The translations under genes were made by a program, and so were the position numbers. The notes beneath the pieces were generated by a model. The model worked only from the letters and a program-made list of their open reading frames with translations. It did not search any database and was not told where the DNA came from. Below are positions 7,604-53,600 of a stretch of 64,000 bases of DNA, piece by piece. How positions within the stretch are numbered: position 1 is the stretch's first letter; every line of letters starts with the position of its first letter. This DNA comes from Klebsormidium nitens (lineage: Eukaryota > Plantae > Klebsormidiophyceae), in assembly GCA_000708835.1 (NCBI GenBank), contig DF237140.1:62001-126000 (forward strand), written 5' to 3'.

Positions 7604-10600
7604 TCAAACGTCCGCCGCAAAGTCCCCGCGCCTTTCGAGGGACGACATCTGCGCGTGCGCGCTGTCCCGCCGTTGGTACGCGAGCGCGCCCCCGGCCGAC
7701 CGGCGCCGCCTCACGAGGAGCAAAACCGCGCCCACGAGGACGACGCCAGCGAGTGCGGCCACGACGGCGACCACGATGACCCACACCTGGAGTGAAGAGG
7801 ACGCCGATAAGCGAAGCTTTGCCGGCTTTTACAATTCTCGACTATCAGAGGGGCTTTGTAAAGATAAGCGCTATAGCTTCACGAAGAGCAAAAATACGCC
7901 CACGAGGACGACGCCCGCGAGCGCGGCGGCGACGGCGACCACAATGACCCACACCTGGATTGGAGTGGTCGCCGATAATCAAGGCTTTGACGGCTTAGTA
8001 ATTCTCAAAGTCAGAGGTCTTGTGTGAAAATCGACGGTAAAACCTCACGAGGAGCAAAGCCACGCCCACGAGAGCAGCGCCCGCTAGTGCGGCCGCGCCG
8101 GCGACCACGACAACCCACACCTCGAGTGGGGAGGTCGCCGTTTGTCGAAGCCTCCAGGGCTTTCATATGTTCGAAGCTCAGGTAAGCTGTGTGAAATTTC
8201 ACGCAAAAATCAAAGGAAGAGCAAAACGGCGCCCACGAGGACGACGCCCGAGAGCGCGGCCGCGACAACGACCACGATGACACACACATGGAGTGGGGAG
8301 GTCGCCGTTTGTAAACCTCCTGAGCCTTACATCGTCCAATTTCAGGTGGACTGTGTGAAATTGAATGCAAAAAGTAGAAGCAAACGGGCGCCCGTATTCA
8401 CGTTTCCCGAGAGCCCGGCCACAACGGCGACCTCGATGATCCACTGGCAGCTGAAGTGAAGTCGCCGAATGTCAAAGCTTTCCGAGCTTTTTAAGGTTTG
8501 CAAGCTTCAGATGGGCTGTGTGAAAGTGAACTCAAGAGATCATTCAAAAGCAAAGATGCGCCCGCGAGCACGACGCCCACGAGGCGACCACGATGATCCA
8601 CATCTGGAGAGGAGAATTTCGCCATTATCACACCAGAGTTCTGGCAACAACTTTCCACAGTCCGCGGAGCGACTCAAAATGCTTCGACCGGGCGTCAGAT
8701 CTGGGCTTACTCAAGCTGCAAATGTGATGGATCACTTCAAGTCAAGTCGGCCATTGCTTCGTGGCCGCCAAGACCCAAAGCGCCAGCACACAAGGACTCG
8801 GTAGCTCCGTTCTAAACTGTCCAGCCTGTCGGAACGTGCATCAATAACACGATCTCCAGGGTCCATCACTTTTTGAATGAGCTCTGAGACGTGGCAGTGA
8901 GCTTGATATACCCACAAGGCTGTGAGCTCCTCCCTTCTATCAACGGGCAGTGACGCACGACTGGCGATGTCAGATCTAGGCCCCGGAACGGTTCACGCTA
9001 ACTAATCCTTGACCGGCTGTTATGCTCACCTTGACCCCTTTTAACAGTTTAAGCTTGACTCAGTTCCTAACCAGCTTCTCCTCTCACCTTGACCCCGCCA
9101 CCGCCGCTGCTTGCTCCAGGCGTCGACGACGTCGCAGTCGGCCCGCCACGCCGCAGAACTTTAGGATTACAACCCCAGTTGATTCACGTTAACCCCATTT
9201 TTAAGCAGCGGGTTTGCTCACCTTGACCCCGCCACCGCCGCTGCTTGCTCTGCGGATGGACGACGTCGCAGTTGGTGTGATAACCGGCGCCACGCCGTTG
9301 GTAGCCTGGGTGGTAGTACTCCCGCGGTTCTGACCTGCAGGTTTTGAAGCCAAGACCAAGTTGGACTCTGGATTACTTGGAGTAGAGTATGCTGGCTTTG
9401 CTGGTGTGTGCGGTTATTTCTTTCTGAGTATCAGACGAGAGTTGCCCCGTTCGACGGAACAAAGAACTAAGGAGTCGGGAAGGTGAAAAGGGAAAAGTTG
9501 AGGAGGGCATAAGTGCGACAAGGAGAAAGACGCGCGTTTTAAAACTGGTGAGGAAGGAAGGGGGTCGCCTCTGCTCGAAGGCTGACCTTATGTAACGAAA
9601 CATTCAGGAAGTTTCTCAACAACGAACTTCTTGAATCTTAGCCTAAGCAGAGGCCCGGCGTCGAAAAGGTAGACCCAAGAAGTGTGGGTCGTTGACTCCG
9701 CTGATGAACCAGCAAATCATTGACACATTTCGCGACTGCAGTGTCCGCTTCCGCTTCAAACGAGTATCTGTTCAAGCCGCCTAGTAGGTTGTTCAAACGA
9801 GGTAGGACGTCCTATTTCCCACCGACGATTTGGCTATCACGCAAACCCTCGATTACGCGCCCCATATTAACGTATCCCCCAAAAAGACCGCACTCTCACC
9901 CGTGCTGTCGACGCTGCAATCTAGTCCCGTGAACCCATCCAGGCACGCACAGAATCCGGTGTCCCCTTCTTGCGCCCCAGGAGTCTGGTTACACACCCCT
10001 CCGTGCTGGCAAACTAGGCTCGGGCCGCAGGCTTGCGTGGCAGTGGGAACGGGCCCCGGGTTAACGACTGGATTAGAGGCGGGTTGAGTGGTAACCGGGG
10101 AGGGGGTTACTGGCGCGGAGGTCGGTGTGGAGGTGGTTGGAAGCGGCGCGGCGGTGGGGCCACTGCTGCTGGCTGCGAGGACGAAAATCGGGTTATCAAA
10201 AGTGTGCGGGTTAGCAAGACCCGGATTCGTAAACAGAAAGATGGACATGCCTCTCCTACAAAGTCTGGCGTTCTAGGTTTTAGGGTAGCAAAACCTCATC
10301 ATTTTCTAAGAGAAGGCGTTTTGGTAGGACGTGCGTCCAATGTATTTCAGGCTGGCAAAGATCGATCCGAAAGGAGACCCCCAAATCAGCCGCTACAGAG
10401 GCCCCGTTGACGATTTCAAAAATGTCTTCCACAGACAAGGGTAGCAGTAATAGCAATTTCCAACGACAGGCTGCGTAGTACGCTTACCCGTGCTAGCTGG
10501 ACTGCAGGGTGCCTGTGACACTCCCCCACATGGAGTCCCGCAGTCTTGCCCGTTGAACCCGTTCGGACAGGCGCACAAGTAAGCCCCTCCCCCTCCTGCC

Positions 10601-11884
10601 TCTGCTCCGGGGGTCTCGTTGCAAACCCCACCGTTTAAGCACAAGAGATTTGGTCCGCATGTCGTAGATCCTGTATCATCAAAATCGAAGTCCCAAGTCA
10701 TCGTCCCTTCTTAGAAAGACGGAGAATTCGAACGCGCACGTCTGGATGATAAAACTTGGCGGCCAGCAGATTGCGAAGTCCAGACATGAGAACAAAATGC
10801 TAGGCTAGTGCTGGGCAACCGAGACAAACACTGAGGCATATGTCCCTGCAAAGAGAAAGGGGCCGAAGGTTTGCCTGACATTCTCAGCCAGAAGCTAACT
10901 CTGGCATGTGCCGTGCAAACGAGGAAAGGTAAACGGAACCGCTGGCACGGAGGAGAAGCTCGCAAAGCCGGGCGGTGATGTGTGTGGAAAAAGGATGAGA
11001 CTGGGTAGCGAGGAAATTTTGCATCTCATAACGGCCAACAGTGCCAGGTCTTTGTACTTGAAGAGTCATCATACTCAGCCCAGCATTACCAAACACGTAC
11101 GTTCAGAAACTGTGGAGCTTTGAAATTATACTTTGCTTCAGAGAAGATTTAGGGAAGATTTAGGCCATTGAAAATCGATCAAGCGATCGCTAGGACGATT
11201 AGCGAGCGCCCATCAGGACAGGGAGATAAGGGGCGCCATGGAGAAAGGAGCGCTGGGCTTGGTGGTGTTGAACATAAATTGCAGAGAGTTTACGGACCCT
11301 GTCTGCATCTAGTGAAGCGTTGCATAAACCAATCTGTGCCTATCGGTAGAAGATGCTGAGTGACCCTCGCTTAGTTGCCAACTTCCTTGACGAGAAACCC
11401 TCTGAAAGGCAACTAATTTCAGAAGTTCAATCCAGCAGATTTATTGGTAGAAAACGTTCCGTACCACCTTGTTTGCTTTGCTTATCTACAAGCTCACACC
11501 ATTAAAGCTCTGTTCTCTTATCAAGTGGCCATGAGTGGTATGACTGGCTCCACCAAGATTGCACCTGCATCAAGCCCAGGTTGGCCACCTTAAGTTGGGT
11601 TGCAAACCAAGACGCTCACCTGTACCAGATGCTGTAACCTTCGTTTCACAGTTCGGCCCCGAGAACCCGTTCAGGCAGGCGCACAGGTAAGCCACGCCCC
11701 CCGTTGCAGACTCGGGCGTTTCGTTGCACAAGGCCCCATTGACACAGTTCAGAGAAGGGCCGCAAGGTGTAGACTGAGCTGTCGCTGGATTCAGAAGCGA
11801 GCTCAGAGTAACTAGTATGAGGAGCCCCGCTGGCCGCCAGCCAAGCTGCTTGTTCTGACGGCATTGCCAGCTGCTTCTATCCAT
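7604..11884 (-). CDS. Type-I membrane protein (~351 aa): signal peptide, three EGF-like repeats, S/T/P-rich stalk, single TM, short tail; exons 11884-11620, 10709-10488, 10172-9900, 9334-9222, 7786-7604
   Basis: Three six-Cys modules C-x5-C-x5-C-xn-C-x-C-x2-GF-x-G-x2-C (e.g. CGPNLLCLNGGVC...CACPNGFNGQDC); hydrophobic N-terminus; TM VWVIVVAVVAALAGVVLVGAVLLLV followed by RRRR; intron phases 1,1,1,0 are consistent. Confidence 0.87.
7880..8610 (-). repeat. About five degenerate ~165-bp tandem copies of the acceptor and TM-exon start in the last intron of the EGF gene
   Basis: Plus-strand units of the form CGCCCACGAGGACGACGCCC...GACCACGATGACCCACACCTGG ending near 7958, 8126, 8292, 8450 and 8605, decaying with distance from the exon. 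Confidence 0.88.
9024..9160 (-). repeat. Copies of the exon 4 end and donor in the EGF gene intron
   Basis: CTCACCTTGACCCCGCCACCGCCGCTGCTTGCTC at ~9084 is identical to the true junction at ~9218; partial copy at ~9025. Confidence 0.85.
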
Positions 11885-12790
11885 GTCTAGCTTCTATTTA
11901 AACAGAGAGACTACAATTGTAATCAGGGGTTTTCAAATTTACGTCATCGGCTGGGATGACAGCAGTATATGGCAGGGCGGCGTTCCCAACTGCAGAGGAG
12001 AGGACGAGAGGAGGCTCAACCAGGTATCAAGCATCTTCTACTTGGTACCTTGAGGATCTTTAACCAGCTCAATCTGGAGAGTCTTCAATGGCGGTATTGT
12101 CTTAACAAGGCTGTTAGGAAACTCGTTGGAGAGCTGACAGGAGCTGTGAAGAGTGTGCAATGCCAGGCTAACCTCTTGAACCACAATCCAGGCCGTCAGA
12201 CAGCCAGCTGTGGTGGTAGTTGCCTTTAAACCTGGATGTCAAATTGACCCTATATAAGTGGAGAAGGGGCATACTTTATATTCTGTGGAGGCGAATGTGG
12301 GCTAGTATTTCCACAGCATTGACTCGGACAATCATTCTTGACGACAGGCATATCAGAAGCTCTTACGCCAGCTTTGAAGCTTGGCGATCATCTGCCGCAC
12401 AATATGACCAGCCCAGGAAGAGGAGGGGATTATGACATCACTCGTCAGAGTTCGAGGAAAATGCACACCTACCTGCATTCACCTGCAGTGTACACTCATG
12501 AAGTCGAGACTCCACAGATAGGACATGGATTCAGCAAAGTTCTCGCTTCTTGGCAGAAGCGAGAAAACTTCAATGCCTTGCTTTCCAAATTCCAGCTGGA
12601 AGCTGGACTCAGCTGGACTGTGGACCTTCCAAATTCAATGAACAAATTTTCTGTGTGCTTTGTTCACTCTGCAGACCGGTGCAGACTCCAGAGTCAGAGT
12701 CTGCACACAGACTCGGGTAGGCAACATGCACCGACTCACAAATTACAACACCAGAGGCCGTTCAATAGAGAAGGCACATGCCCGTGGCCG

Positions 12791-13187
12791 GTACCGACCG
12801 TATCGGCCATCAATGATCATAGGTACATATTCGGACGCTTGGAAATGGATAGCGCGTCCGTTTTCGGAGTTCGGACCCTCGGTTCGGACAAGATCTCTAC
12901 CGGTACTACAGTGTATTACTGGTAATAAGGAAGTACATACTACCAGTACAACCGACTATAGCTGGTACCGGGAAGCAGGGTACCAGTAGATTGACTAGCA
13001 GATTGTATCTTACCGGTAGAGATTATCACCGGGGACTCTGATCAGGGAACCGGCGGTACCTTTTTCCGATGTGTACATAATAATTAGTGAGAAATTCAGG
13101 TACCGCCTGGTGCACATATGCAGCAGCGTGCCTGTGCACAGGTACCGCTACTTACTTTGCGCTTGGCCGATACCTATGCACATGTAC
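12791..13187. promoter_or_regulatory. Dense GTAC-core cluster (12 copies); candidate CuRE/SBP-box binding array upstream of the beta-propeller gene
   Basis: GTAC at 12791, 12823, 12903, 12933, 12946, 12965, 12980, 13056, 13073, 13100, 13142 and 13184; about 1.6 expected by chance in 397 bp. The function is inferred. Confidence 0.6.
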
Positions 13188-13426
13188 CTAGACCGCTTCC
13201 GCTTCGTGCTGCATTTGCAGCCAAGCTGGGTGCATTCACTTCGAACTTCTAGGTCGCTTCGGTTCAGAAATACACAAGCATTCGTCGCCTCAGCAGCTAC
13301 TATGATCTAGCCACCTTCATTGAACCTCCGTTACGACTTTCCGCAGCTGTCGTCTTACTCATTCCTATTGCCTCCGGAGCTATCAACAACTCTCCTTTGT
13401 AAACAGCTGACGACGTCGCTGGCGCT

Positions 13427-16400
13427 ATGGCGCGGGGCGCTGCAATCGTGCTCGCTCTGGTGAGCTGCCTCTTGGTGGCGTCTCAGCTGGCAGACGCACA
13501 GTCCACGTCAGTCACAGTCAGCACCACCAGGAAGAAGGGCCTGTTCTATGTCTTTGCTGATGGAGAGGTGAGCTTAATGAGGGAGTACTTGTCTCACATC
13601 AGTCACCCTCATTATATCAGATGGATGAAGACCTGTGAAAGTTCTTGAGGCGAGAGTCTTTGGTTGATAATAGCTCGTACACTTGGTGGAAAAACCTTCT
13701 TGAAGAGTTTCGCTAAAGCACTCGAGACAAGTTCTGTGCAGTCTAAAATTGAACAGGATTCAATTCACATAGACATTCAGCCAGGCTGAGCAATGAAACA
13801 CAGTTGCCAGCCGGACTAAGAATCCGGAGGCATTCCGCACAGACAATAGATCAGCTGCTGAACGTATCAATCTTAGCTAAACATATTTTTGTTGGGGTGC
13901 CCTGCTTGAAATTCCACATCCACTTTTGTTCTGCCTACGTTCGATTCACAGAAGATTTTGCTCTGCGACCCAGTTCTTAGCCTGGTCTGAACTTGGCTCT
14001 GAGCTTGCCCTGACCACGAATGTTTGATGAGAAGCTTACCCTCCAATTTGGAGGTATTCACAATGTAAAGGTCTGACTTGAGATTGGATGCTCTAATATG
14101 TTGCCAATAACCTTTGAGCTACCTGACAGGCTAGAAAAGGACCGATGTGACCAGGGAATCTTGTATCTCATCACCACTCTGATTGAAGGCCATTGCATCC
14201 CAAAGCGGCAGTTGCACTCTCAATAGATTCCAGAACTGATGGAGTGATAGCGCCAGCTATGCACCTGATTGGCAACGCTAGCTGAGACAGTCAGCGATGT
14301 CTGGTTCAAGTGGGAGTTCATCAGATGGTACTGGATAGCAACAGTCTCGAGGAGGCACTTCAGCCGCCTGCTTTATCAATCCACTTACAGCCTCTCCAAA
14401 TAGAATTCATTTTCTCCTCAACACTTCCCTTCCCAGGCCTCTGTAGAACCCCCCTCTCAACTCCCCAAACTTTACCCCTGTCTCAGCACCAACTATTATG
14501 GTACCCCCCTCTGGTGCAAGAATCTGCAGCTCTGGTCCCAACCCGCCTCTGATCTTAATCCACCTCTGGTCCTAACCCGCCTCTGGTCTTAACCCGCCTC
14601 TGGTCTTAACCCTTCCCTTCCCTGCGCAGATTGTGGTCGTAGACGCCATTGCGGGTGCCATCGTCAAGTCCATTTCCAACCCGACAATGCCCTTCCCCAA
14701 CAACTGCACTGGCACCCCCTTCGCTGGCTCTTGGTCCGACTCCGCGTATGCCAACGGCCATCTTTTCGCGGGATCCTACTACAGAAACTCGACCATTGGA
14801 CCACAGGATGGCGTTTACGTCATCGACACCAAGACCCAGACCCTGGTGCAGAGAATCCCCGTCGAGACCCGGCCTGTTCACACCTACTATGTGCCGTTCC
14901 TGGTGAGTGGAGTGTGAATTGGCTCTGTAGAAAGCAGCCCTGAGCTGAGTGCACTGACTGTAAGCCCTTTACAGTGAACATGCATCGAGGGTAGCTTGTT
15001 GGTGATCTGTTGGCGCTGATTGAAAGCTCAATGTTGCCTTCTGCTTTAACAAAGATTCCTTCCCATGCTGTGTCTACCTGGGTGTCGTCAAGATTCTAGA
15101 AACATCTACAATCAGTCAGTTCGATTGACTCTCCTGTCAGCCTCCACGATAATGGTTATCACCCATTGAAACGAGCTTTCTGTCAGCTTCCAGATCGCAC
15201 TGTCCGTTTCAGTGGCGGTATCAAAAGAAACAAGCTGCAGTTACTCCTGCCTAAGGCATTTGCATCTGGGGTTTCTCCAGGTAGAATCGTGCAGGCCTGG
15301 AAGCGACTTGTTTTGCAGATTTTATCAAAGCAAGCCGTTTGTTGCTGAAGCGTGCTTTTTCTGATGATCCTTTCGCTACTTTGCAGAGCCTTGTGGTCGA
15401 AACTTACAAAAGCTATCTGATGCCAAACCGACCTTGCAGAATCTGATTGCTCTCATCTTGCATCACCACTCCCACTTAAGCCACTACGGCTTCATCACCC
15501 GTTGAACGAGAAGCAACATTCAACCTAAAAGAAACGGCTTTTTCCGCTTGCGAATACCCCCTCTGACAAGCAGGGTTGCTCTTACGTTATATCTCACTCG
15601 GCAACGTGACTCTCACGTTTGCCCGTACATTCACGCCTCGGACTTGTCCCTCTATTCAAGATATTTTGGCAAGACAGTGTCTTCCAAACTCTGAACGCTT
15701 TCGAGTGCCAAAATATCTGAGTCTGACGTCACTTTGACTTCTTTGCAGGGCGAGGTGTGGAGCCACTCCGACGGCACCGGCAACTTCGACGTCATCGACG
15801 CGCGCAACTACTCGGCAGTGCACGAGAACGTCATTGCTCACGTCAACATCAGCGGTCACGGGAAGCTGCTCTTTGACGATGGTGAGTACCTGTCGACTTC
15901 GTTCTTCGCCTGACTTCGTTGTTCGCTTCGTCTTTCTTCCTTCGTTCTTGTTGAAGTAGTGCAGCTATTATGGTGACATTTCCCTTTCAGGTCATGATTC
16001 TCAAGCTGTGCTTCGTACAGGTGGTGATATCTAAGAAGTTTTCGTCGCTCTTCTGTTTTGACATGATGCACCATAGCAGACTCCAGCTATTTCGACACCA
16101 CTCTTTCCTGCTCGTCAAAAAGGGTCACATTCCCAGGAACACTCGCGCATCTGAGTCCTGAAATTTTCCCATCCGACGGACCAGATTATATATCAAGAAT
16201 TGTCCCGAGCGACTACTTTGGCTCTAAGGGCACTCTGCTGGCAGCCGAAGGGGAACCGGTCCCCACAAAGCCCCGCTTGACGAGGTTTTTCACACCACTG
16301 TTGCAGACCTCGACAGCAAGGGCTACTCGTCGAATGTGAACGAGCCTGGCGCGTACATCTTGGATCTCGACGCTCAGGGAACCGACGGGACCCTGGCCTT

Positions 16401-19400
16401 CGTGAACTTCACCGGGCAGACCCTTCCCGGCGGCGTCGTCACGACATGCCCAGGAACGCACTCCCTTACGTACTCTAAGGTGGGGTTTTTTTTTGGACTT
16501 TTGGATTTACGGGTTTGTGGTATATGAGTCGTTGGTTTATTGGGTTCTCAGCTTGACTCTGCGTTAACAAGATCTATTGGGCAGTCCCTTCTGGGCGGCG
16601 TTACTCGCGACGTTCACTGGAACCCCGTCCCTTACGAACTCTCAGGCAAAGAACTCTGCTCCTAGGACATTTGGAATTCGGGCACCTCTTTGATCTATCT
16701 TGATAGCGGGGTTCTCAACGTGACTCTATTCGATTCTATTATCGACTATGCCCGGTATTCTGTTCGTCCGGATAGGCCCTTCCTGACGGCGGTGTCACGG
16801 CTTGCCCGGCGAGTTACTCCCTGGCTCACTCCTACGTAAAGACCTTTTCTACTTGTTTTGAGTTCGACTCCACTCAGTGATGAGATGGTCTCGTTCCGGG
16901 CTGCGCCGCTACAACGAGACCGGTGTTTCGCTGCCCGGCCTGTTTTCGAAAAAGACTTTAGAACTCATTCTCACCTCGGCTGTGCCCGGTGATGGAATCT
17001 GCCGGGAAGGCGGTCCCGAGATCCGTTGGGAACCACTCCGTTACCTGATTTGCAAAAGGATGATCCCAAGTATGTCATCTCTTTCCCTTTCTTGGTGATG
17101 ATTACCCGCGACTCGCGTCTTGCACGGTTGTGCTTTTTGGAAATATAGCTCCTAAAAAGAATCGCGCCTTTCTTCTGGCTCCTGTCCTACATACGGAGGA
17201 GGAAGTGAGGAGCACGAAGACTCGTATTTCCTTTTGTGGAGAGAAGTTGCGGCGCCTGCCACATTTTGCTGTGCATACGAATTATGATCGACCGAATGTC
17301 TTTTCTCACTTTTTCTCAGCACCGTCCCCCACAAAATCACGCGTTTTTCATTCGACCCATGTCTTTCCCAGGTGATAGCCTTTCCAACTCGACGGGCTGC
17401 TCAGGCACCAACCGTTGATGCTTCTGCTCTCCTTTCGCGCCCAGAGCAGATCCCAAAATTGAGGGCGTTATAATCCGTGCTTCTTGACAGCTGACCACGA
17501 AAGGAACAATACCGATCCATTATACGTATATCGTACGTCTCACATAGCGATTTGTTCCTTCCCGCAGATCAACCGTCACGCGTATTTCGAGTGCACGGCC
17601 GTGAAAGACCCCAAAAACGCGTCCATCACTCTGTTCTACCCGGGAGCCATCGAACTTGACACCGACAACGACACCGTGGTCTCACAGCTGCCGTTCCATG
17701 TAAGCCGCGTTCCCCTCGGTCTCGTTCACCTCCGTGTTTCATTGTAACCCCGCGGGGATCGACGGGTTGAAAAGCAAGCCCATCTTGTCTCGTCGGTCGG
17801 TCTAGTCTCCGTTTCGTTAGAACCTCTGGGGTCTCTCGACCAGTTCTGAGAAACATACCATCTTGTTTCGTCGGTCGGTCCAGATTTCCGTTTTGTCAAG
17901 ATCCCTTGTGGTCTTTTGGCCTCAAAGAAAACCCTTTAATCTCATCTTATACGCCGCTTCAGTTGGTTAGCTCTGCCCGGCAACATCGCCGACGTTTAAA
18001 GCAGACTCCATTTGAGTGCCTATCTGTAACTCTTCTGCGGCAGGAGCTGACTTCATAAGTCTTTTGCAATCAGCGGCCATCATGGAAACAGTCTTACCCA
18101 GTCTCTTCTGCATCTTGTTGAATCCCTGCCCATCTCCGTAGAATTGTACGAGACCTTCTCGGCCTCTTGCCTTCTCCGCGCCTTCTCCCACTCGGAACTG
18201 AACTGAACGAAAACTCACCCGTAGAGCACCTCGGTTTGACCCGAAATCCTGTACGTTTCAGAAATGGGTTTTGAGCTTTTCGTAGAGATAAAAACTCTGC
18301 TAGCTACTGCAATTTTTCAACTTCTCAAAAGTTCGTCTTTCCCTCTGGATAGCTACAATCTTTCGAATCCTGATAATGTTGTTCTCTTTTACAGGGTCAC
18401 TTGGCAATTACGCCTGACGAGCAGTTTTTGACGGTCATCGACTCTCCGGACCGGATTGTGAACATCGTCCAGATTACGCCCATCGGCCAAGAGGACCTCT
18501 ACTTCTCGGTCCCCCTGAATGACACCCCCGGCGAAGGCACCCCGGCCTTCTACCCGAAAGTGAGCCCAAAAGCGTTCCGTCTGCTTTGCTCTCAAAGAGT
18601 TGCTGACTGGTGCAAACTCCGCCTCCCTCTCTACGTGACCCTTGTTTCAACTTCCAGCCTTGTTCTCCTATTTCAACGTTTCCTCTGGAAAGGCTGCTTC
18701 TTTTGGAGGGTTGGTCATTCCTTATCGGCTTGCTGTTCCCAAGGTATCGAACTTTTCAAATGAAGGGTAAAGCCCAGAGCAAACGCTCAAAACTTGTCTT
18801 TCTCTCGCCCATCCCTTCGCTGTTTGAACCTGGATTTCAAAAACTGCATCTACGCATTTTGAGATGGATCTTCTGAATGATACGAAGACAAGCAAACAAG
18901 ACCCTTCCTTACGTTTCTATTCCGTCGGTCAGATTTTCCGCTCATTAAGCATCTACCGCTTTCCTTGGCACTCGTTAGGCAAGAGTGATTCCCCTGTTCC
19001 ATGGCAGTCATTTATTGTTGGCACTCCCTACGTTGGAGTTGCTCACTGGAATGTGGGGTGAAATGCCCCAAAACCCGAAGTCCTCGACCCCACAATCTTC
19101 AGGGTGTAGTACCATGAACTCAACCTGAACTTAACCCCAACTTAATTCTGCAGGGCTCTTTCTTCATCATGGCGATCCCCATACTCAACTCCCCCAAGAT
19201 GGCCATCATCGACTTTAACCTCGTCATTAAATGCGGCGACAACTGCACTGACCCGGGGCAAACCATCAAGTACGTTGACGTGGGTAACCAAAACCCGCCG
19301 GGCCAACCCAACGCGCTAACCACCTCCCGGAGCGTCGACGCCGGTTACGCTTACATCTGCACTCCGGCGAACTATGACCAGGGTATTGGCTGCTATAACC

Positions 19401-19615
19401 CGATCAACGACACCACGATTTTCATCGGTGGTGCCCGTAACCCGATTCGTAACCCTGCCCGGGTCTACTTCGCCCCGGGCGTGTTGGCGGGCGCCCCGGA
19501 CTCGAACGTGAACGCGTACTTTAACTGCTCGAGCGCCCCGACCACGCTCGGGAACTATCCCAAGTCGATCGCGCCGGTGGTTAACCAGACCTTGGTCAAG
19601 AGCGCTCAGCCTTAA
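13427..19615 (+). CDS. Secreted YVTN/WD40-like beta-propeller protein with His motifs; exons 13427-13567, 14630-14902, 15749-15881, 16307-16479, 17568-17699, 18395-18559, 19154-19615
   Basis: Signal peptide MARGAAIVLALVSCLLVASQLADA; propeller-type strands (VYVIDTKTQTLVQRIPV, FDVIDA, AYILDLD, LAITPDEQFLTVID); many N-x-S/T sequons; all phases consistent. The exact family is not recognised. Confidence 0.85.
14531..14611 (+). repeat. 17-bp minisatellite (AACCCGCCTCTGGTCTT), about 4.5 copies, just upstream of an acceptor
   Basis: Directly visible tandem array before the exon 2 acceptor at 14629. Confidence 0.9.
16575..16840 (+). repeat. Two degenerate copies of the exon 4 3' end in beta-propeller intron 4
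   Basis: GGGCAGTCCCTTCTGGGCGGCGTTACTCGCGACG...CCCTTACGAACTCTCAGGC and AGGCCCTTCCTGACGGCGGTGTCACGGCTTGCCCGG...CTCCTACGTAAAG versus the exon end GGGCAGACCCTTCCCGGCGGCGTCGTCACGACATGCCCAGG...CCCTTACGTACTCTAAG. Confidence 0.75.
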
Positions 19616-46700: not shown

Positions 46701-49601
46701 TGGGTGTTGCTCGCGCGCGTGCCGGAAGTGGTTTACTAAGCTTATACAACATTCCTGGAATACGAATGGTCTAATAAGATCAACAAAATCTGTGTTCGCT
46801 ACTAGCACGGAGATAAAGCTTTACGTTCGTTTCTGCACATGCTCAAAATGTACTTCGAACCACGACTCAGATTTGATGGCCATCAGCCCCAGGAGAAGCC
46901 TTTGCAGATAGCCCACGCCAAAGAGACGGAGCTGGCTTTGCTCTCAGTCATTAGCGGTCGAAATTAGTCTGCGCACCTGTCGGGGGTCTTTGTCTGGATT
47001 TGCTCCACCAGGTCTTCGTCCGTGTTGAACGCCTCCGCCAAAATGTCCTTCGTGAAGCCGTGCAGAAGGCTGCTCTGTCCCGTGACCTCGCCTGCCATCA
47101 GAGGGAACACCTGAAAAAAAAGGGTTTAAGACCTAACCCACTAGTGGGGGAAACACCTGAAACAGGATATCAGACCAAAGCCACTAGTATGGGGAACACT
47201 GCAGAAAAGAAAGGTTTATGACCAAACCCACTGGCTAGTGGTTCGAAGGGTGATCAAACCGCGATGTTCCCAAAAACAGCCCGGGCAATAGGATCCGGTC
47301 AACGATTCAACCCCGAACGTAGATAACGCCTCGGACAAAAAAGAAAGTTTGTGGGTGGGTACATATGAATAGCTTGAATAGAGGTTGAAGCTTAACAACA
47401 GAACACACCCACTAGCTGACGCGGCGACTCTGTTGGCGGGGGAGCCGTTCTTTCAAGCACAAGTTCCGAGAGTGTCTAAAGATGCCATACAGCCGAAGGC
47501 CGACAACGGAACAAACGTTGTCGAAGGAGATAATCTTTCTGCTTCCCCCAATTCCACCGCCAGCATCTTCACTTGGTCGGAAGTCCGGCGGAGCAGCCGT
47601 TCCGCTCGGAACGCGAGCGGAATAAGCCGTCAAAGCGGAACCGAACGCCCACCTCGAATTTGGACAGCTCCCCGGGCACGTCCACCGGGCGAGCTGCCGC
47701 TAGCAGGGTGAACTTCTGCTCCGTGTCGTTGTTGAGGATCCACGTGGCCCAGCCAGCTGGCAGCGCGATGACGTCACCGCGGCGGAAGCGGCGGACCCCC
47801 GTCTCCTCGCCCTTGTCGTTGATGATGCCCGCGTGCGCGGTCCCTGGGCGGGTTAAGGAAGCGGTTAGAAGGGTCTGGTTTTGGCACGGGTCGGCATCGA
47901 AAAGATGGTTCAGGATGAGGTTAGTTCTGTGAGGCGGTGATGAAAACATCGAGATGGTTAGGGATTAAGAAGGGTGGTCGGACATTAACCGCCCCGCTTA
48001 TAAGCACAATCACGAAACGGATGAGTCTTATCCGATCTCGAGGAGGTGGAACATGGTGGGGCGTAGGTGAAACGAAGAGGTAGGATTCCGGCAAAGATCG
48101 AGATGCGATCGAGATGCGACAGAATGTTTTACTTCGACATAGACTTCGAAAAGTCAATATCAAGCTTCAAGGAAAGCCGGGTGATCACCGCGCAAGTGTC
48201 ATGCATTTGTGAGAAAGCCCAACATGAAGTTGCCCGCCCTAGAATCGACGTACAACTGTAGGAATCTTGGAGATGAAGCCTCCAAGACAGCAACGCGCTG
48301 GCGACTGCAAAGCTCAAGAATCAGCTTCGTGGTCGCTTGCTCCGAAAGCCACATCATAAGGTTCGCGGCGACCGTAGGTTCAAACCTGTGACCTCGAGAT
48401 CGCCGGAGAATGCTCAACTCGACGAAAGGCGAGGGACCGGTGAACAAAGAGGCGGCACGTATGCTGTCCAGTCGCCGAAGCGGTGTGTTCCAGAACGCCC
48501 CTTCACCGAACAGAATAATAACCTTCAAGATAGTAGAGCTAAGAAAAGCTGACCAACCGGAGAACCCTCCAAACCCCGTACCTTGCAGCACGGCCATGAG
48601 AAGGTCCGCGTCGGCGTAGTGCGGCGGGCGCAGCGTGCCCGGCTCCATAACTAGAATGAAGGCGGCCAAGTTTTCGTCCCTGAGCGTCTTTGTGTCCGGG
48701 CCCCATGCCGATTCGAAGCCGGCGTCCGACTTCAGGTGCTCCGCCGGGGGGCCTGGAAGGGGATTCGATGCTGAAAACGTTTAGATTCTCCGTTTAAATC
48801 CTGATTGCATGGATGTGCAATTAAATGCATTTTGGAACATAACGCTCATTTGTGTTCAAGAAAGTGCTCATTTTTTAACGTGCTGGCCTAGAAGATTTAC
48901 CGATGCTCGTCCGAATATGTCGGAAGGTAACTTGATCGACGTCAGGTACGTGGCCACATGGAACGAAGTTTGATCGAGAATTTCAACAGGAATTTAGAAA
49001 CTATCGCGCGCCCCGCCCAAATCGTGTCACTTGGAGAAGCTGCCAATAAAAAAGCGACAGAAAGAGCTGCAGCCGCACAGATTCTCCGTCTTCATATCCT
49101 TCAGGAATAAGTGTTGGTCGTTAGAGCCGCAAGGCCTTGATCTCTGGTCTTTGCAGGTGATTCTAAGCAACGCAATCCGTCTACTTCACATTCTTGTTTG
49201 ATCTGGCTTGATTAGTTTAATCTTTGTCCCGCTATACAATTTGTAGCACAATTTTGAATTGAACACAAGCAACTGCCCGGTCATGCACCGCTGTTTGAGA
49301 ATAAGTTTTGACTTTGCTGATGGGTACTCTCAACAAAAGCTCGGGTTGATTTAACTTGCATAGGGACAATGAGGCTCTGATTTGGTCGAAGTTAATATCT
49401 TGTAGAAGGTCCTGATGCTGTGAGCTTGAGCATGATTCAGAAAGGGTTTTGTCCAACAAAGTATTATAGCTGAGAACCGAGCAGATTAGAGTCACCTGGA
49501 ATGAAATCTCCAGACGTGTAGTCATACGCGCCCGCTGCAATCAAGCTTGCTAGAAGATAGCACGCCAAGAGGACATGCGCGAAGCCCCGTTTCCTCGCCA
49601 T
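43716..49601 (-). CDS. Vicilin/7S-globulin-like bicupin B (At2g28490-like) with signal peptide, ~444 aa; exons 49601-49496, 48770-48582, 47843-47653, 47110-46977, 46247-46112, 45731-45654, 45215-45138, 44585-44493, 44045-43716
   Basis: MEPGTLRPPHY, GDVIALPAG, LLHGFTKDILAEAFN, YNVDEADPDF, GAMLLP, GEAFVVPRFFP, FLAGKNSIY; 1335 nt in frame. Confidence 0.93.
44659..44806 (+). repeat. ~150-bp element in cupin B intron 7; inverted copy of 47511-47658
   Basis: GGCTTATTCCGCTC...TTCCGAGCGGAACGGCTGCTCCGCCGGACTTCCGACCAAGTGA.GATGCTGGCGGTGGAATTGGGGGAAGCAGAAAGATTATCTCCTT is shared with the reverse complement of 47511-47658. Confidence 0.92.
46205..46629 (-). repeat. Near-identical 125-126 bp tandem repeats (about 3.4 units) spanning the intron 4/exon 5 junction of cupin B
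   Basis: GTCCATTGCCATCAGCTCCGCAGAGCCCAGCTTCACC.GCCCACTGCGAGAAAAAGCAC... units start at 46205, 46330, 46456 and 46582. Confidence 0.95.
47511..47658 (-). repeat. ~150-bp element starting at the cupin B exon 3 donor; inverted partner of 44659-44806
   Basis: Begins TTCGAG|GTGGGC at the exon 3 donor; see the partner copy. Confidence 0.92.
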
Positions 49602-50648
49602 CCCTAGTTTCTAAGCTTTCCTTCTTGCAGAGGTCGTTTGACAGCACACGGTTGAGCTTTGTTTACTTTCCAAACACTGACCCGTGTCAAGCTTGAGCTG
49701 CTTTACGCAATCCTCTTCGTTTTGGTTTGTAGACTGTTCGCTCCAGGACCAATCCGAAAAGCGCCTGCTAGGCTTGTACAACAAACAGAAAGCTTCAATT
49801 CTCTGGCGGACTTCAGATTCTGGAACCGCGCCTGGCGCTTGTGTTCTGAAAGCAAGAGCTCTCGTATGAATGCAGGTGTTCAATCAAGATATTCAAGCTT
49901 CTCTTCGTCTCTTCCATTTGGAGAAGACGCAATCTGATAGCCTTGCGCCTGCACTGGTTCAGTTTATGTTTCGAGCCGACCGACCGGCCTCGAGCGAATG
50001 TCAAAGTGCCTACAGCAGCTTGTGCAGTGTATTCTTGCGCTGCCATGCGCTGGGCAGAAGGGCGGCCGCGCGTGCGCGTCAGATATTTTGCGTGCCACGT
50101 ACTCGCATGCATCGTACACGTATATGTACTGAAGAGATATTCACTTTCTATCGGCCGCTGCATGACGCATGTAAGCCCCTCTAGCGATCAAAATGTTTTC
50201 TTCGCATCCGAATGCTGAGCCAAAGCATTCGAATGCTGAGCCAAAGATAATTTAAGATCAATGGAAGTTAACCGTTCTTTCCTTCAGACAGTGCCTCTTT
50301 CTTCAACGAACTGTTCTCGAAAAGACACCGCCCAGAGGATATCGCAGAGAGACGCTCTGCCCCGCCGCCGCTCAAGTTTGCCCACAATTGAAAGCAAGCT
50401 CGCTGCCGAAAAACCTTGGAACTCAGGCTACTTCTCAGGGGCCTCTCTTGTCAGAGCTGGGCGCGGTGCACTTTTAAGATTGCTGTGCAAGCAATCCTTT
50501 GATAGTAGTTTTCTGCGGGCTTTCCTCTTCCGTTTCAAGGGGGCTTCGACACAATAATTTGGCTCAGCATCCTCTTTTAGAGCTTTACAGACCTAAGTCG
50601 AGCGCCCAAGTAAAAAGCAAGTGAATAGAGACCCGCTGAAAAGTAAAG
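49602..50648. promoter_or_regulatory. Putative bidirectional promoter between the two cupin genes, with an ABRE (GTACGTGGC on the minus strand, 50094-50102), an RY element (CATGCAT, 50106-50112) and CE3-like CGCGTG (~50069-50074)
   Basis: Divergent ATGs at 49601 and 50649; the motifs are read directly; their function is inferred. Confidence 0.6.
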
Positions 50649-53600
50649 ATGGCGTCCACAAGGTTGACCTTCGAGCATGTGCTGTTGGCGTGCTCTCTTC
50701 TGGTTTGCTTGGTGTCCGTGGTGGCGTATCATGGGTACACATCCGGGGACTTCGTTCCAGGTAAGGTTTGGCATGTTCGAAACGGGTTTGGTTGCTGGGC
50801 TTCTTTCCTCAGGCGCTTACGCAGTTTTGCATGGAGATCTTGAAGCAAGTCAGACAAAGTTGAGAAACTGAAAGGCATATTTCGAAAAGCTAGCAGCATT
50901 TTTGCGTGATCTGAAACCAGAAGTGTAGCTTTTTATTTGTATCTGATAAGGCATGCGATTCATAAGCATGCCAAAGAGATCTAATTGCTTGATTCCTTTC
51001 TTTCGAAGCTCTCAGAAGTGAGGCTGATGATTTTCAAACAAAGCTTCGAGCAGGTCCGGAACCTCTGCCCTTTCCTTGATGACTCAGGATATGTGTTTGT
51101 GCCAATCTGTCCCTATCATCTGAGCCCTTGATCCTGCAAGCAACATGAAAAAGCCTTTAGCAAAGTTTAATCTTAACCTATGAAAAAGAAACCTTCAGAA
51201 ACTTTGTCGAAGTGACAGCAAACACCTACTTCTGCAGGCCAGCCGTCCGAATATATGAAGTCGGACGGCGGCTTCGAGTCCAACTGGGGCTCGGACACGG
51301 ACACCAAGCCGCTCATCGACGAGGACTTCGGCACGTGGATCCTGGTCATGGAGCCGTCCACGCTGCGCCCGCCGCACTTCGTCGACGCGCACATGCTCAT
51401 GGCCGTGCTGCAAGGTGCCCATTCTACGTTCTGATTTCGGCCTGCCTTTAGACTTTTGCTGTTTCTTGTTGTAGTGGTTTACACGTCTGCCCCACTTCCC
51501 AAATATTTTCCTTTCTAAGGTCTGCAGTTTTCGTCACCAGAAGTCTCTTGAAGGAGATAACGTTGACAATTGGGGCCATCAGAAAATCTGGGATCTCCCG
51601 CCCTGCATTCCATTCGCTTTACATCCCCTCTCGTCATTGCTAACAGATTACGTCACCCTTACGCAGGCACCGACCACGGTGGCTTTCATCAACGATCAGA
51701 GCGAGGAAACCGATTCGATACCCCTTTCCAGCAGCGCATCTCGCCGTTTATCATGCCCTGTTTGCTTCTCGTCTGCTTCGTTCTTCAAGCATCTCAGTCC
51801 AATTCATTCTTTCTTTAAAACACTTTAACCTCTTTGACTAACCCTCAGGCACCGCGCGCGCGGGCATCCTCAACGACAAGGGCGAGGAGACGGGCGTCCG
51901 CAGCTTCCGTCGCGGTGACGTCATCGCGCTGCCAGCTGGGCACGCCGTGTGGATCCTCAACAACGACACGCAGCAGAAGTTCTCCATGCTTGGGGGAGTG
52001 CGCCCGGTGACAGTCCCCCGGGAGCCGTCCAAGTGGGAGGTGGGTCACTAAAAATACTTGGTTATCCTGTTTTAAGTTGCCCGGTGATTCGGTTGGGATC
52101 TGCGAGCCGTCCAAGTGGGAGGAGGGTCACTGCGAAAGCTTAAATCTTGGGCTTTTCGAACGCTTGGTGCTTGTGTCCTGCGACCAGGCCACGTGGGTAG
52201 GACTTTGCTTTTTGTTTCATCAACGTTTGCCTGTTTACAACTCCGCAGGAGTTGTTGAGATTGGGTCGGTGATCTGAGTCAGTATTAAAAACGCATCAGT
52301 TCCTGGTTTTCTTTGTTAGGGATTCGCCAGATTGCTGCTCCGATAATGTGCGCACCTTTCTTCCAAAGGTCTCCGCATCAGCTTCGGGAATCACACATTT
52401 CCCTGGAAATATTGTTCTGGCGAATCGTGGAGCAGATACTGCCCAAGATATCTCGAACAGCGTCCTCGGATCTTCTCTCCTACTGGAGCCATCCAATGGC
52501 GAAAATGTAATGAAAATTCGCGAGGTGGCCCGGACAAACCTGAACTTCGCTTCACCTGTTGCAGTCTCGTTGTCGACAACCAGCTGACATCGAAGTCCGT
52601 GACACACGGTGCCTAGCGAATATCCTGATGAGCCCATTCACTCGACCTCTGAGGGCACGCATTTTTATAAGCAGCCCACTTATTAAAACCCTAGAATTCG
52701 AAGAACCAAAATTGAAACATCCTTTTGCAGGCTTTTCCGCTGGTGGCCGGTGAGGTGAGCGGAAAGAAGAGCATCCTGCACGGCTTCACCAAGGACGTTC
52801 TGGCGGAGGCGTTCAACGTGGACGAGGGCCTCGTGGAAGACGTCCGCTCCAAGGCGCCGGAAACGTGAGCCAGCCGGAGCTAGAACAATCTAAGATCACT
52901 TGGTCATTCAATTGGTCCCTAGCCAGCCATTTCAAAGTTGAGATGCTTGGAGTTGATCACGTGCGCGAGCTGCGAGCGATTAATAAAGATTGAGGACGTG
53001 CGCAAACTTTCAACGCGGTGTCCGGTGAGGATCTGGAACGGGATCCGAAAGGATGGGCGCAGCGAATCTGATGGCGAACCCTTCAGTAAACTAGCGCAAG
53101 CAAGCAGTTGGTTTGTACGTGCATTTAACCTCTGTCCGCTTCGATCCCAATCCCTCTCGAGTTCCGTTTCCGTTTCCGCTTCCGCTTCCGATCCGGTACT
53201 AAGACTGGATAAGCTGAGCGCGGCGAGCTGCTGGGAAATGGTCAAGCCTGCGCGAGCAGTAAGACCATCGTCTGACCCGTGATAACTCCCGCTCTCATTA
53301 GATTTCCGATTCTACGTTCTCCTGCAGCGTATTGATAGAGCTGGGCACGGCGGAGATGCTAGCAAAGGAGCACGAGCTGAGCATACGCAAGCAACCAGAC
53401 ACTCCTATAAACGAAGTCCAGTCTCATTTCCTTCCTGTTCCGTTCCGCAGCGGACTATCAAGCTGGGCGCGGCGGAGCTGCTGGCGATGGAGCACGAGCT
53501 GAGCCTGCGCGAGCAGCAGAGCCCGCACAAGGACGACGGCTACATCTACAACATCGACAAAGCGGATCCCGACTACGAAGCCGAAGGCGGCCAGGTGCGA

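What the first reader, a model, noticed from the sequence alone, without database searches (positions are those of the whole stretch)
12791..13187. Twelve GTAC cores upstream of a secreted His-bearing beta-propeller: candidate copper-response module
Twelve GTAC sites occur in 397 bp (about 1.6 expected), 240-640 bp upstream of the ATG at 13427. Clustered GTAC cores are the established copper-response elements bound by the SBP-domain factors CRR1 (Chlamydomonas) and SPL7 (Arabidopsis). The downstream gene is an unrecognised secreted protein with a possible metal site. Inference: a Cu-deficiency-induced extracellular metal-scavenging or metal-sparing protein. Caveat: six of the twelve are GGTACC and could derive from a decayed repeat. 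The divergent EGF gene could also be the target.
Basis: partly seen in the sequence, partly recalled or inferred. Interest (0 to 1): 0.8.

Follow-up and report, generated by a model that had tools for sequence, protein, structure and literature searches.

The report
Motif-packed bidirectional promoter in Klebsormidium
The GTAC pile-up is real and fills the untranscribed core of a promoter shared by two secreted-protein genes of the alga Klebsormidium nitens. It is built from two longer motif types, one matching the known binding site of algal LEAFY, and nothing yet links it to copper.

Summary
The count is right. There are 12 GTAC in 12791-13187, against about 1.2 expected at the window's own rate. 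No other 400-bp stretch has more than 6, and no simulation reaches 12.

The DNA is Klebsormidium nitens (DF237140.1). RNA contigs from four studies place the stretch in the untranscribed core of a bidirectional promoter. On one side lies an EGF-repeat gene (5' exon reaching at least 12643). On the other lies KFL_001910120 (transcript from about 13259), a secreted, probably YncE-like beta-propeller protein.

It is not a repeat remnant. The GTACs belong to two longer motifs:
- TACCR-type palindromes: GGTACC x6, and TACCRGTA x5 within 121 bp.
- GTACATA x3 plus one ATGTACC.

None has the canonical SBP flank CGTAC, which 49% of GTACs elsewhere in the window have.

The TACCGGT cluster, TGTACATA and CATGTAC recur in the same order and at similar distances in the promoter of the 73%-identical paralog. 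That promoter is otherwise unalignable and lacks GGTACC. These elements therefore look selected.

TACCGGT is the core of the published 'type III' site of Klebsormidium LEAFY; GTAC is the SBP core. Copper control is untested and has no specific support here.

Earlier notes of this scan (unchecked) list at least six other GTAC islands in this genome on other DNA, several of them between divergent genes.

The parts
12791..13187 (.). GTAC-dense island (12 GTAC). No RNA contig of four runs covers 12776-13169, so it is the untranscribed core of the bidirectional promoter.
12893..13023 (.). Central sub-cluster. It holds five TACYRGTA sites (12898, 12917, 12941, 12981, 13011), four of them CTACYRGTA. 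It is bounded by a perfect 13-nt inverted repeat, ATCTCTACCGGTA (12893-12905 / 13011-13023). The two outer sites are perfect TACCGGTA and contain CTACCGGT, the centre of the published LFY type III DNA.
12790..13146 (.). Six GGTACC palindromes (starts 12790, 12964, 12979, 13055, 13099, 13141), mostly extended to GGTACCG. They include the 10-nt direct repeat CAGGTACCGC (13097, 13139) and its inverted partner GGCGGTACCT (13052).
12823..13189 (.). Second GTAC class: GTACATA at 12823, 12933 and 13073, and ATGTACCT at 13182-13189. TGTACATA and CATGTAC recur at similar offsets in the paralog's promoter.
12830..12889 (+). Three TTCGGAC (12830, 12870, 12883) plus TTCGGAG (12864), lying in the GTAC-free gap of the island. 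The window holds 10 copies of this 7-mer on both strands.
13259..19615 (+). KFL_001910120 (492 aa; signal peptide; YncE/YVTN-like propeller candidate plus Cys-rich C-terminal part). RNA contigs begin at 13259; the ATG is at 13427. RNA joints give introns 13568-14629, 14903-15748 and 15882-16306, and an intron after 16479 with the next exon starting at 17568. The stop codon ends at 19615.
7604..12643 (-). Divergent EGF-repeat gene (338 aa annotated; CDS 7604-11884). First coding exon 11619-11989, 5'-UTR intron 11990-12472, and a 5' non-coding exon from 12473 to at least 12643. RNA depth continues into bin 12579-12775.

Best explanation
The island is a compound cis-regulatory module that fills the non-transcribed space (about 500-600 bp) between the start sites of two head-to-head genes of Klebsormidium nitens. 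It is a dense cluster of short palindromic binding-site-like words set in otherwise unrelated sequence.

There are two classes of word:
- Class 1 is built on the half-site TACC(G/A). It appears as TACCRGTA (x5, centre of the island) and as GGTACC(G) (x6, mostly on the flanks).
- Class 2 is GTACATA / ATGTACC (x4).

Shown here: the position between the two transcripts, the statistical excess, the absence of repeat structure, and the collinear recurrence in the paralog's promoter of the TACCGGT cluster, TGTACATA and CATGTAC.

Inferred: sequence-specific factors bind these words cooperatively and set the condition-dependent output of one or both genes. The best documented match for the TACCGGT palindromes is the dimeric 'type III' site of Klebsormidium LEAFY. 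The GTAC cores of class 2, and possibly of GGTACC, are candidate sites of one of the two SBP/SPL factors. Which signal is read out, copper or another, is unknown.
For: Statistics: 12 GTAC against about 1.2 expected, and no simulation reaches it. CTACYRGTA occurs 4 times in 123 bp against 0.004 expected. TACCG/CGGTA occurs 10 times in 400 bp, reached by 0 of 5000 random placements.

Position: RNA contigs of four studies end at 12643 or beyond on the minus-strand gene and start at 13259 on the plus-strand gene, with zero depth in 12776-13169.

Not a repeat.

Paralog KFL_001230150: its real ATG is at L002 13763, with a homologous signal peptide. The densest ACYRGT cluster of that 31-kb locus lies at -483 to -403 (4 sites, 3 of the locus's 5 ACCGGT; reached by 68 of 20000 random placements). 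In the window the corresponding cluster lies at -528 to -415 (5 sites; 1 of 20000). The only TGTACATA of L002 is at -264 (here -355), and a CATGTAC is at -226 (here -246). The two promoters do not otherwise align.

Factors: the type III LFY DNA 5'-TTGCTACCGGTCGCTG-3' has central C1G1 and half-site A3C2C1, and Klebsormidium LFY binds it as a dimer (bioRxiv 10.64898/2026.04.13.717636). LFY is present in K. nitens (PMC5737466). K. nitens has two SPL genes (PMC10796333).
Against: - No binding or expression experiment is available.
- Only two of the five central sites have the perfect ACCGGT core; the other three have CA/TG at the centre, which the LFY structures show to be contacted.
- I know the type III motif only from one 16-mer and the numbering given in a preprint, not from the SELEX matrix.
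- GGTACC, half of the GTACs, is absent from the paralog's promoter and from the Closterium orthologue's promoter, so its function has no comparative support.
- GGTACC and TACCGGTA are the two phases of a (GGTACC)n repeat, so a very old microsatellite origin of the vocabulary cannot be excluded.
- The paralog comparison rests on two promoters only.
Confidence: 0.65

Rival explanations
1. Copper-response module. The GTAC cores are CuREs bound by the K. nitens CRR1/SPL7-type SBP factor, which switches the beta-propeller gene (and/or the EGF gene) on under Cu deficiency.
For: - GTAC is the essential SBP core, and clustered GTACs mark Cu-responsive promoters; for example, the Arabidopsis FSD1 ChIP peak holds eight (PMC9516184).
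- K. nitens has two SPL genes.
- The island is promoter-proximal.
- Three sites fit WGTACW and one fits GTACTRC.
- Two WGTAC-type sites are positionally conserved in the paralog's promoter.
- The + gene's contig depth varies 70-fold between runs (17.6 to 1236), while the EGF gene's varies about 3-fold. This is a weak measure.
Against: - 0 of 12 sites have CGTAC/GTACG, against 85 of 175 elsewhere in the window.
- Eight of the 12 GTACs are embedded in TACCR/GGTACC words.
- GGTACC is not a described SBP preference in the papers read.
- No Cu-dependent expression data exist.
- The protein has no recognised Cu-related family.
- Earlier unchecked notes of this scan place similar islands between unrelated genes (PrmA/ARM, NADAR/DnaJ), which does not look like a small Cu regulon.
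Confidence: 0.15
2. LEAFY target module. The central TACCRGTA cluster is a set of type III LFY sites, making this gene family a direct target of algal LFY. The GGTACC words offer extra TACC(G) half-sites. This can coexist with SBP input.
For: - CTACCGGT (12897 on +, 13012 on -) is identical to the centre of the crystallised type III DNA.
- All five perfect ACCGGT sites in the two paralogous promoters read TACCGGTN on at least one strand; two of the paralog's are TACCGGTC, as in that DNA.
- These clusters are the densest ACYRGT clusters in 64 kb and in 31 kb, and they lie at matching offsets.
- LFY is present in K. nitens.
- Klebsormidium LFY binds such sites as a dimer with a 0-bp spacer.
Against: - Three of the five sites here carry a central CA/TG.
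- The motif knowledge comes from one oligonucleotide.
- ACCGGT is a short palindrome that other factors could read.
- The Closterium orthologue's promoter has no such cluster.
- No in vivo LFY data exist for any alga in what I read.
Confidence: 0.28
3. Neutral remnant. The island is the decayed trace of a (GGTACC)n-like microsatellite or of a small foldback/MITE insertion (13-nt terminal inverted repeats, 131 bp) and has no regulatory role of its own.
For: - GGTACC and TACCGGTA are two registers of one hexamer repeat.
- Several instances run 8-11 nt in that register.
- A perfect 13-nt inverted repeat brackets 105 bp.
- The GGTACC class is absent from the paralog.
Against: - The words are scattered over 400 bp, separated by 13-80 bp of unrelated sequence with no periodicity.
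- There is no arm-to-arm similarity beyond the 13-mer.
- There is no other copy in 95 kb of K. nitens DNA.
- No target-site duplication is visible beside the 13-mers.
- The TACCGGT cluster recurs at the same offset in a paralogous promoter that has otherwise diverged completely.
Confidence: 0.1

Closest known systems
Copper-response elements (CuRE): GTAC cores bound by SBP-domain factors CRR1 (Chlamydomonas) and SPL7 (Arabidopsis), e.g. the FSD1 promoter with eight GTAC
   Same: Many GTAC cores lie in a few hundred bp just upstream of a transcription start, and the species has SBP-domain genes.
   Different: No CGTAC flanks, and only 4 of 12 sites fit described SPL7 preferences. Half are GGTACC. 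The density is higher than in the cited example (12 in 397 bp). There are no copper data. The island serves two divergent genes.
LEAFY type III binding site (Klebsormidium subtile, Interfilum paradoxum, Nothoceros LFY; palindrome without spacer, ...TACC|GGT...)
   Same: TACCGGTA/TACCGGTC palindromes have the same 8-9-mer as the crystallised DNA, they are clustered, and they recur in a paralogous promoter of the same genus in which type III binding was defined.
   Different: No natural genomic target of an algal LFY is described in what I read. Here three of the five sites have a degenerate centre. Binding is not tested.
Arabidopsis AP1 / Antirrhinum SQUAMOSA promoter, where LFY and SBP (SPL) sites lie side by side (from my own knowledge, not checked here)
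   Same: LFY-type and GTAC-type words are juxtaposed and partly overlap (for example ACCGGTAC at 12899-12906).
   Different: Different LFY site type (III, not I), a different organism and different target genes. The analogy is purely formal.
Homotypic clusters of transcription-factor sites in bidirectional promoters
   Same: Short words are repeated in both orientations between two divergent start sites, with no extended sequence similarity.
   Different: The words are unusually dense and palindromic. Earlier scan notes suggest a recurrent genome feature in K. nitens that the literature I searched does not describe.

Membership tests
SBP/CuRE copper-response cluster | Several GTAC cores in the proximal promoter | tested here: met
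   12 GTAC lie 72-468 bp upstream of the + gene's furthest RNA 5' end, and 16-150 bp from the region where the minus gene's transcript begins.
SBP/CuRE copper-response cluster | SBP-domain factor encoded by the species | tested here: met
   From the literature only: two SPL proteins in K. nitens, in Groups 2 and 4 (PMC10796333).
SBP/CuRE copper-response cluster | Flanks like characterised sites (TNCGTACAA/CGTAC; GTACTRC; A/TGTACT/A) | tested here: not met
   0 of 12 are CGTAC/GTACG (49% in the rest of the window); 1 is GTACTRC; 3 are WGTACW; 6 are GGTACC. The preferences of the K. nitens proteins are unknown.
SBP/CuRE copper-response cluster | Copper-dependent transcription of the linked gene | not testable with these tools
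   No Cu-deficiency data for Klebsormidium were found. Run metadata are coded.
SBP/CuRE copper-response cluster | Binding by the SBP domain, lost on GTAC mutation | not testable with these tools
   Needs EMSA or DAP-seq.
LFY type III site cluster | Palindrome with central CG, half-site ..TACC, no spacer | tested here: met
   TACCGGTA at 12898 and 13011, and CTACCGGT equals the centre of the published DNA. Three further sites have a central CA/TG.
LFY type III site cluster | LFY gene present in the species | tested here: met
   From the literature only: LFY is 'present already in K. nitens' (PMC5737466).
LFY type III site cluster | Sites kept in related promoters | tested here: met
   The paralog's promoter has 3 ACCGGT plus 1 ACTGGT within 85 bp at -483 to -403, the densest cluster of L002. 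It is not seen upstream of the Closterium orthologue.
LFY type III site cluster | Dimeric LFY binding in vitro or in vivo | not testable with these tools
   Needs EMSA, DAP-seq or ChIP.
Transposon fragment / decayed tandem repeat | Other copies, periodic units, or long terminal repeats with target-site duplication | tested here: not met
   No TRF array. No second copy in the window or in L002. Arm-to-arm alignment score equals that of shuffles apart from one 13-mer. The whole genome could not be searched.
YncE/YVTN-type 7-bladed beta-propeller (the + gene's product) | Family HMM above its cut-off, or a confident fold | tested here: inconclusive
   Only sub-threshold hits: TIGR02276 E=0.002, NF052280 E=0.05, DUF5074 E=0.027. 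Atlas feature hits score 0.93 with about 180 shared features to YncE/lactonase clusters. The AF2 model has pLDDT 40.7 and is all-beta but unusable.

The most novel reading that the evidence does not exclude
The island, together with the matching cluster in the paralog's promoter, is a natural genomic target of LEAFY in a streptophyte alga. It would combine type III LFY palindromes with SBP-type GTAC cores, an algal counterpart of the LFY-plus-SPL promoter logic of land plants. It would also belong to a wider, undescribed class of GTAC/GGTACC-packed promoter islands in K. nitens.
Probability: 0.2. Interest if true: 0.75.

Novelty: new variant of a known kind. Interest (0 to 1): 0.45.

Why it matters
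What LEAFY and the SBP factors regulate in algae that have no flowers, and at most two SPL genes, is an open question. A compact 400-bp fragment carries perfect type III LFY palindromes and a dozen GTAC cores, lies between two expressed genes, and has a paralogous promoter as an internal control. That makes it a ready-made probe for EMSA, DAP-seq and reporter tests in K. nitens.

If the copper reading were right, it would extend the CRR1/SPL7 circuit to the base of the streptophytes. If the islands noted elsewhere in this genome are of the same make, they define a promoter class that has not been described.

Tried and rejected
- **Tandem and dispersed repeat**: rejected.
- **Rfam and bacterial-type promoter/terminator scans of the region**: nothing relevant.
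- **Exon-by-exon Pfam, PDB and Atlas searches of the + gene**: nothing. Exact look-up of the last-exon ORF: not on record.
- **Protein identification.** The big HMMER search with the last exon returned the annotated protein P0001 and two zygnematophyte relatives. From then on I used the database protein.
- **Structure.** AF2 on the four-sequence alignment gave pLDDT 40.7, so I ran no fold search on it.
- **Global alignment of the two paralogous promoters** and blastn: no real similarity. This is itself informative.
- **EIN3/TEIL consensus AYGWAYCT.** By eye, only the site at 13182 fits, so I did not pursue it as the main factor.
- **Sayou et al. 2014 and Kropat et al. 2005** could not be read. 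The LFY matrix and the Chlamydomonas CuRE flanks were therefore not available.
- **Search of papers for the gene ids**: none found.
- **Closterium GGTACC triplet** (L003 23203-23280): turned out to be a minisatellite.
- **Genome-wide frequency of such islands, and the promoters of Cu-economy genes of K. nitens,** could not be sampled: no tool reaches the rest of this genome without an exact protein.

Full report
**1. Observation.** The twelve GTAC sites are at 12791, 12823, 12903, 12933, 12946, 12965, 12980, 13056, 13073, 13100, 13142 and 13184. The window has 187 GTAC, against 116 +/- 12 in dinucleotide-preserving shuffles. About 1.2 are therefore expected in 397 bp. The next densest 400-bp stretches hold six. 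None of 5000 random placements reaches 12. In 60 third-order Markov simulations the maximum was 8 GTAC and 2 GGTACC per 400 bp. Six of the window's nine GGTACC lie here.

**2. Organism and genes.** The last exon of the downstream gene, searched by reference, returned a 492-aa database protein identical over its length (P0001). It is KFL_001910120 of Klebsormidium nitens, on DF237140.1 of GCA_000708835.1. The annotation around it lists:
- a kinase gene;
- a 338-aa EGF gene on the minus strand (window 7604-11884);
- the 492-aa gene (13427-19615);
- a P450 gene and a GT90 gene.

After I used the database protein.

**3. Where the island lies.** I laid contigs of four RNA-like runs from four studies on 11200-17100.

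For the + gene, the contigs begin at 13259 (two runs), 13279 and 13375. They are spliced at 13568-14629, 14903-15748 and 15882-16306, and after 16479. The next exon starts at 17568.

For the minus-strand EGF gene, the contigs show:
- the exon 11619-11989;
- a 5'-UTR intron 11990-12472 (CT..AC on the + strand);
- a 5' exon from 12473 to at least 12643, with depth continuing into bin 12579-12775.

All four runs have zero depth in 12776-13169. The island is therefore the non-transcribed core of a bidirectional promoter. It lies as close to the EGF gene's start as to the + gene's start. Contigs cannot fix start sites exactly.

**4. Not a repeat.**
- TRF finds no array.
- The 600 bp around the island has no other copy in the window.
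- Aligning the left part against the reverse complement of the right part, or against the right part directly, gives scores like those of shuffles and of control regions. The one exception is a perfect 13-nt inverted repeat, ATCTCTACCGGTA, at 12893-12905 / 13011-13023.
- Spacings between GTACs (13 to 80 bp) show no period.

**5. Anatomy.** The GTACs are not generic. None is CGTAC/GTACG, although 85 of the 175 GTACs elsewhere in the window are. GGTACC, the rarest class elsewhere (3 of 175), makes up 6 of 12 here. Two longer words account for the sites.

Class 1 is built on TACC(G/A):
- GGTACC x6, mostly GGTACCG.
- Five TACYRGTA within 121 bp (12898, 12917, 12941, 12981, 13011). Four of them are CTACYRGTA, of which the window has five in all, with 0.004 expected in 130 bp.
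- TACCG/CGGTA reaches 10 in 400 bp, matched by 0 of 5000 random placements.

Class 2 is GTACATA x3 plus ATGTACCT.

Eight of the twelve GTACs belong to class 1 and four to class 2. A further small cluster, TTCGGAC x3, lies in the GTAC-free gap at 12830-12889.

GGTACC and TACCGGTA are the two registers of a (GGTACC)n repeat. The vocabulary could therefore have a microsatellite origin. The instances are nevertheless dispersed in unrelated sequence.

**6. Comparative test.** The protein family is tiny: a K. nitens paralog KFL_001230150 (P0006, 73% identity), one protein of Mesotaenium endlicherianum and one of Closterium.

The paralog's annotated N-terminus seems wrongly joined. The exon homologous to exon 1 lies at L002 13825-13911. 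It is preceded by an ATG at 13763 that encodes a signal peptide like that of P0001.

Measured from the respective ATGs, the two promoters share three elements in the same order:

| Element | This gene | Paralog |
|---|---|---|
| ACYRGT cluster | five sites, -528 to -415 | four sites, -483 to -403 |
| TGTACATA | -355 | -264 (the only copy in the 31-kb locus) |
| CATGTAC | -246 | -226 |

.

In the paralog, three of the locus's five ACCGGT lie within 85 bp. In each sequence this is the densest ACYRGT cluster. It is reached by 1 of 20000 random placements in the window and by 68 of 20000 in L002. Otherwise the two promoters do not align.

Shared words at shared positions in diverged sequence argue for selection, that is, for function. 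GGTACC is absent from the paralog's promoter, and no 400-bp stretch of L002 or of the Closterium locus has more than 4 GTAC. That half of the island therefore has no comparative support.

**7. Candidate factors.**

(a) SBP. GTAC is the essential SBP core, with TNCGTACAA as the consensus (PMC10796333). SPL7-activated genes show GTACTRC, and A/TGTACT/A binds best in vitro. The FSD1 ChIP peak holds eight GTAC (PMC9516184). K. nitens has two SPL genes, in Groups 2 and 4. In the island, one site fits GTACTRC and three fit WGTACW. The two class-2 sites kept in the paralog are of the TGTAC type.

(b) LEAFY. Klebsormidium LFY binds, as a dimer, a palindromic 'type III' site without spacer. The DNA given in a 2026 preprint is 5'-TTGCTACCGGTCGCTG-3', with central C1G1 and half-site A3C2C1 (bioRxiv 10.64898/2026.04.13.717636). 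LFY is present in K. nitens (PMC5737466). CTACCGGT occurs at 12897 (+) and 13012 (-). The paralog has TACCGGTC twice (once on each strand) and TACCGGTT once. The other three central sites here have CA/TG at the contacted centre. This is what CpG decay would produce, so they may be weak or dead sites.

I could not read the original SELEX paper. This match therefore rests on a single oligonucleotide.

**8. Copper.** Nothing I could test bears on copper specifically.
- No Cu-deficiency transcriptome of Klebsormidium is in the library.
- The gene ids occur in no paper.
- The + gene's contig depth ranges from 17.6 to 1236 across the four runs, while the EGF gene's ranges from 73 to 247. This hints at condition-dependent expression of the + gene, but contig depth is a poor measure and the conditions are coded.
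- Earlier notes of this scan (unchecked leads) list at least six further GTAC islands on other pieces of this genome. Several lie between divergent, functionally unrelated genes (PrmA/ARM, NADAR/DnaJ, Cys-rich pairs, a Cache-like gene). If real, this fits a general promoter class, or a broad SBP regulon, better than a small copper regulon.
- In the 95 kb of K. nitens DNA that I could read, there is one island.

**9. The protein.** P0001 has a signal peptide and many N-X-S/T sites. In the four-sequence alignment, H144, D146, H234 and seven Cys are invariant. HMM hits are sub-threshold but consistent: YVTN repeat, YncE, DUF5074. Language-model features point to bacterial YncE/lactonase-type propellers, with a score of 0.93 and about 180 shared features. 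The AF2 model is all-beta but has pLDDT 40.7, so I ran no fold search. 'Secreted beta-propeller' is plausible. A metal site is not shown.

**10. Verdict.** The feature is real and strongly non-random. It is best read as a compound cis-regulatory module of a bidirectional promoter. Part of it, the TACCGGT cluster and two TGTAC-type sites, is backed by conservation in a paralogous promoter. The copper interpretation is one possibility without specific support. A LEAFY type III reading of the central palindromes fits the sequence at least as well and is the more novel possibility.

Noticed in passing
window 49601-50649 (centre 50095-50130): The 1-kb divergent promoter of the head-to-head bicupin (vicilin-like) pair carries ACGT-core boxes and an RY-like GCATGCAT next to three CGTAC-type GTACs. 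This is the classic seed-storage-protein promoter grammar (B3/ABI3 plus bZIP), here in a streptophyte alga.
   Followed up: partly
L002 10001-13911 (K. nitens DF237072.1): The annotated KFL_001230150 (559 aa) seems to have a wrongly joined N-terminus. An ATG at L002 13763 encodes a signal peptide homologous to that of KFL_001910120. The first 89 annotated residues come from exons 2.6-3.8 kb upstream and may belong to another gene.
   Followed up: partly
window 12830-12889: Three TTCGGAC plus one TTCGGAG lie within 60 bp in the GTAC-free gap of the island. This is a third small homotypic cluster of unknown meaning.
   Followed up: no
window 11989-12473: The EGF gene has a 483-bp intron in its 5' UTR. 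One run shows an alternative joint 11989>12173, and low-depth unspliced contigs cover the intron.
   Followed up: no
whole window: GTAC is over-represented window-wide (187 against 116 +/- 12 in dinucleotide shuffles), even without the island. About half of the sites outside the island are CGTAC.
   Followed up: no
L003 23195-23275 (Closterium sp. CANJKZ010000272.1): A short purine-rich minisatellite (unit about 24 bp) contains GGTACC three times, inside or near the 5' part of an exostosin-like gene. It is unrelated to the Klebsormidium island.
   Followed up: partly
window 13427-19615 and relatives: The KFL_001910120 family was found only in streptophyte algae (two Klebsormidium paralogs, Mesotaenium, Closterium) among 1.84 billion representatives when searched with the last exon. 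Its C-terminal 150 residues carry conserved Cys and have no recognised domain.
   Followed up: partly
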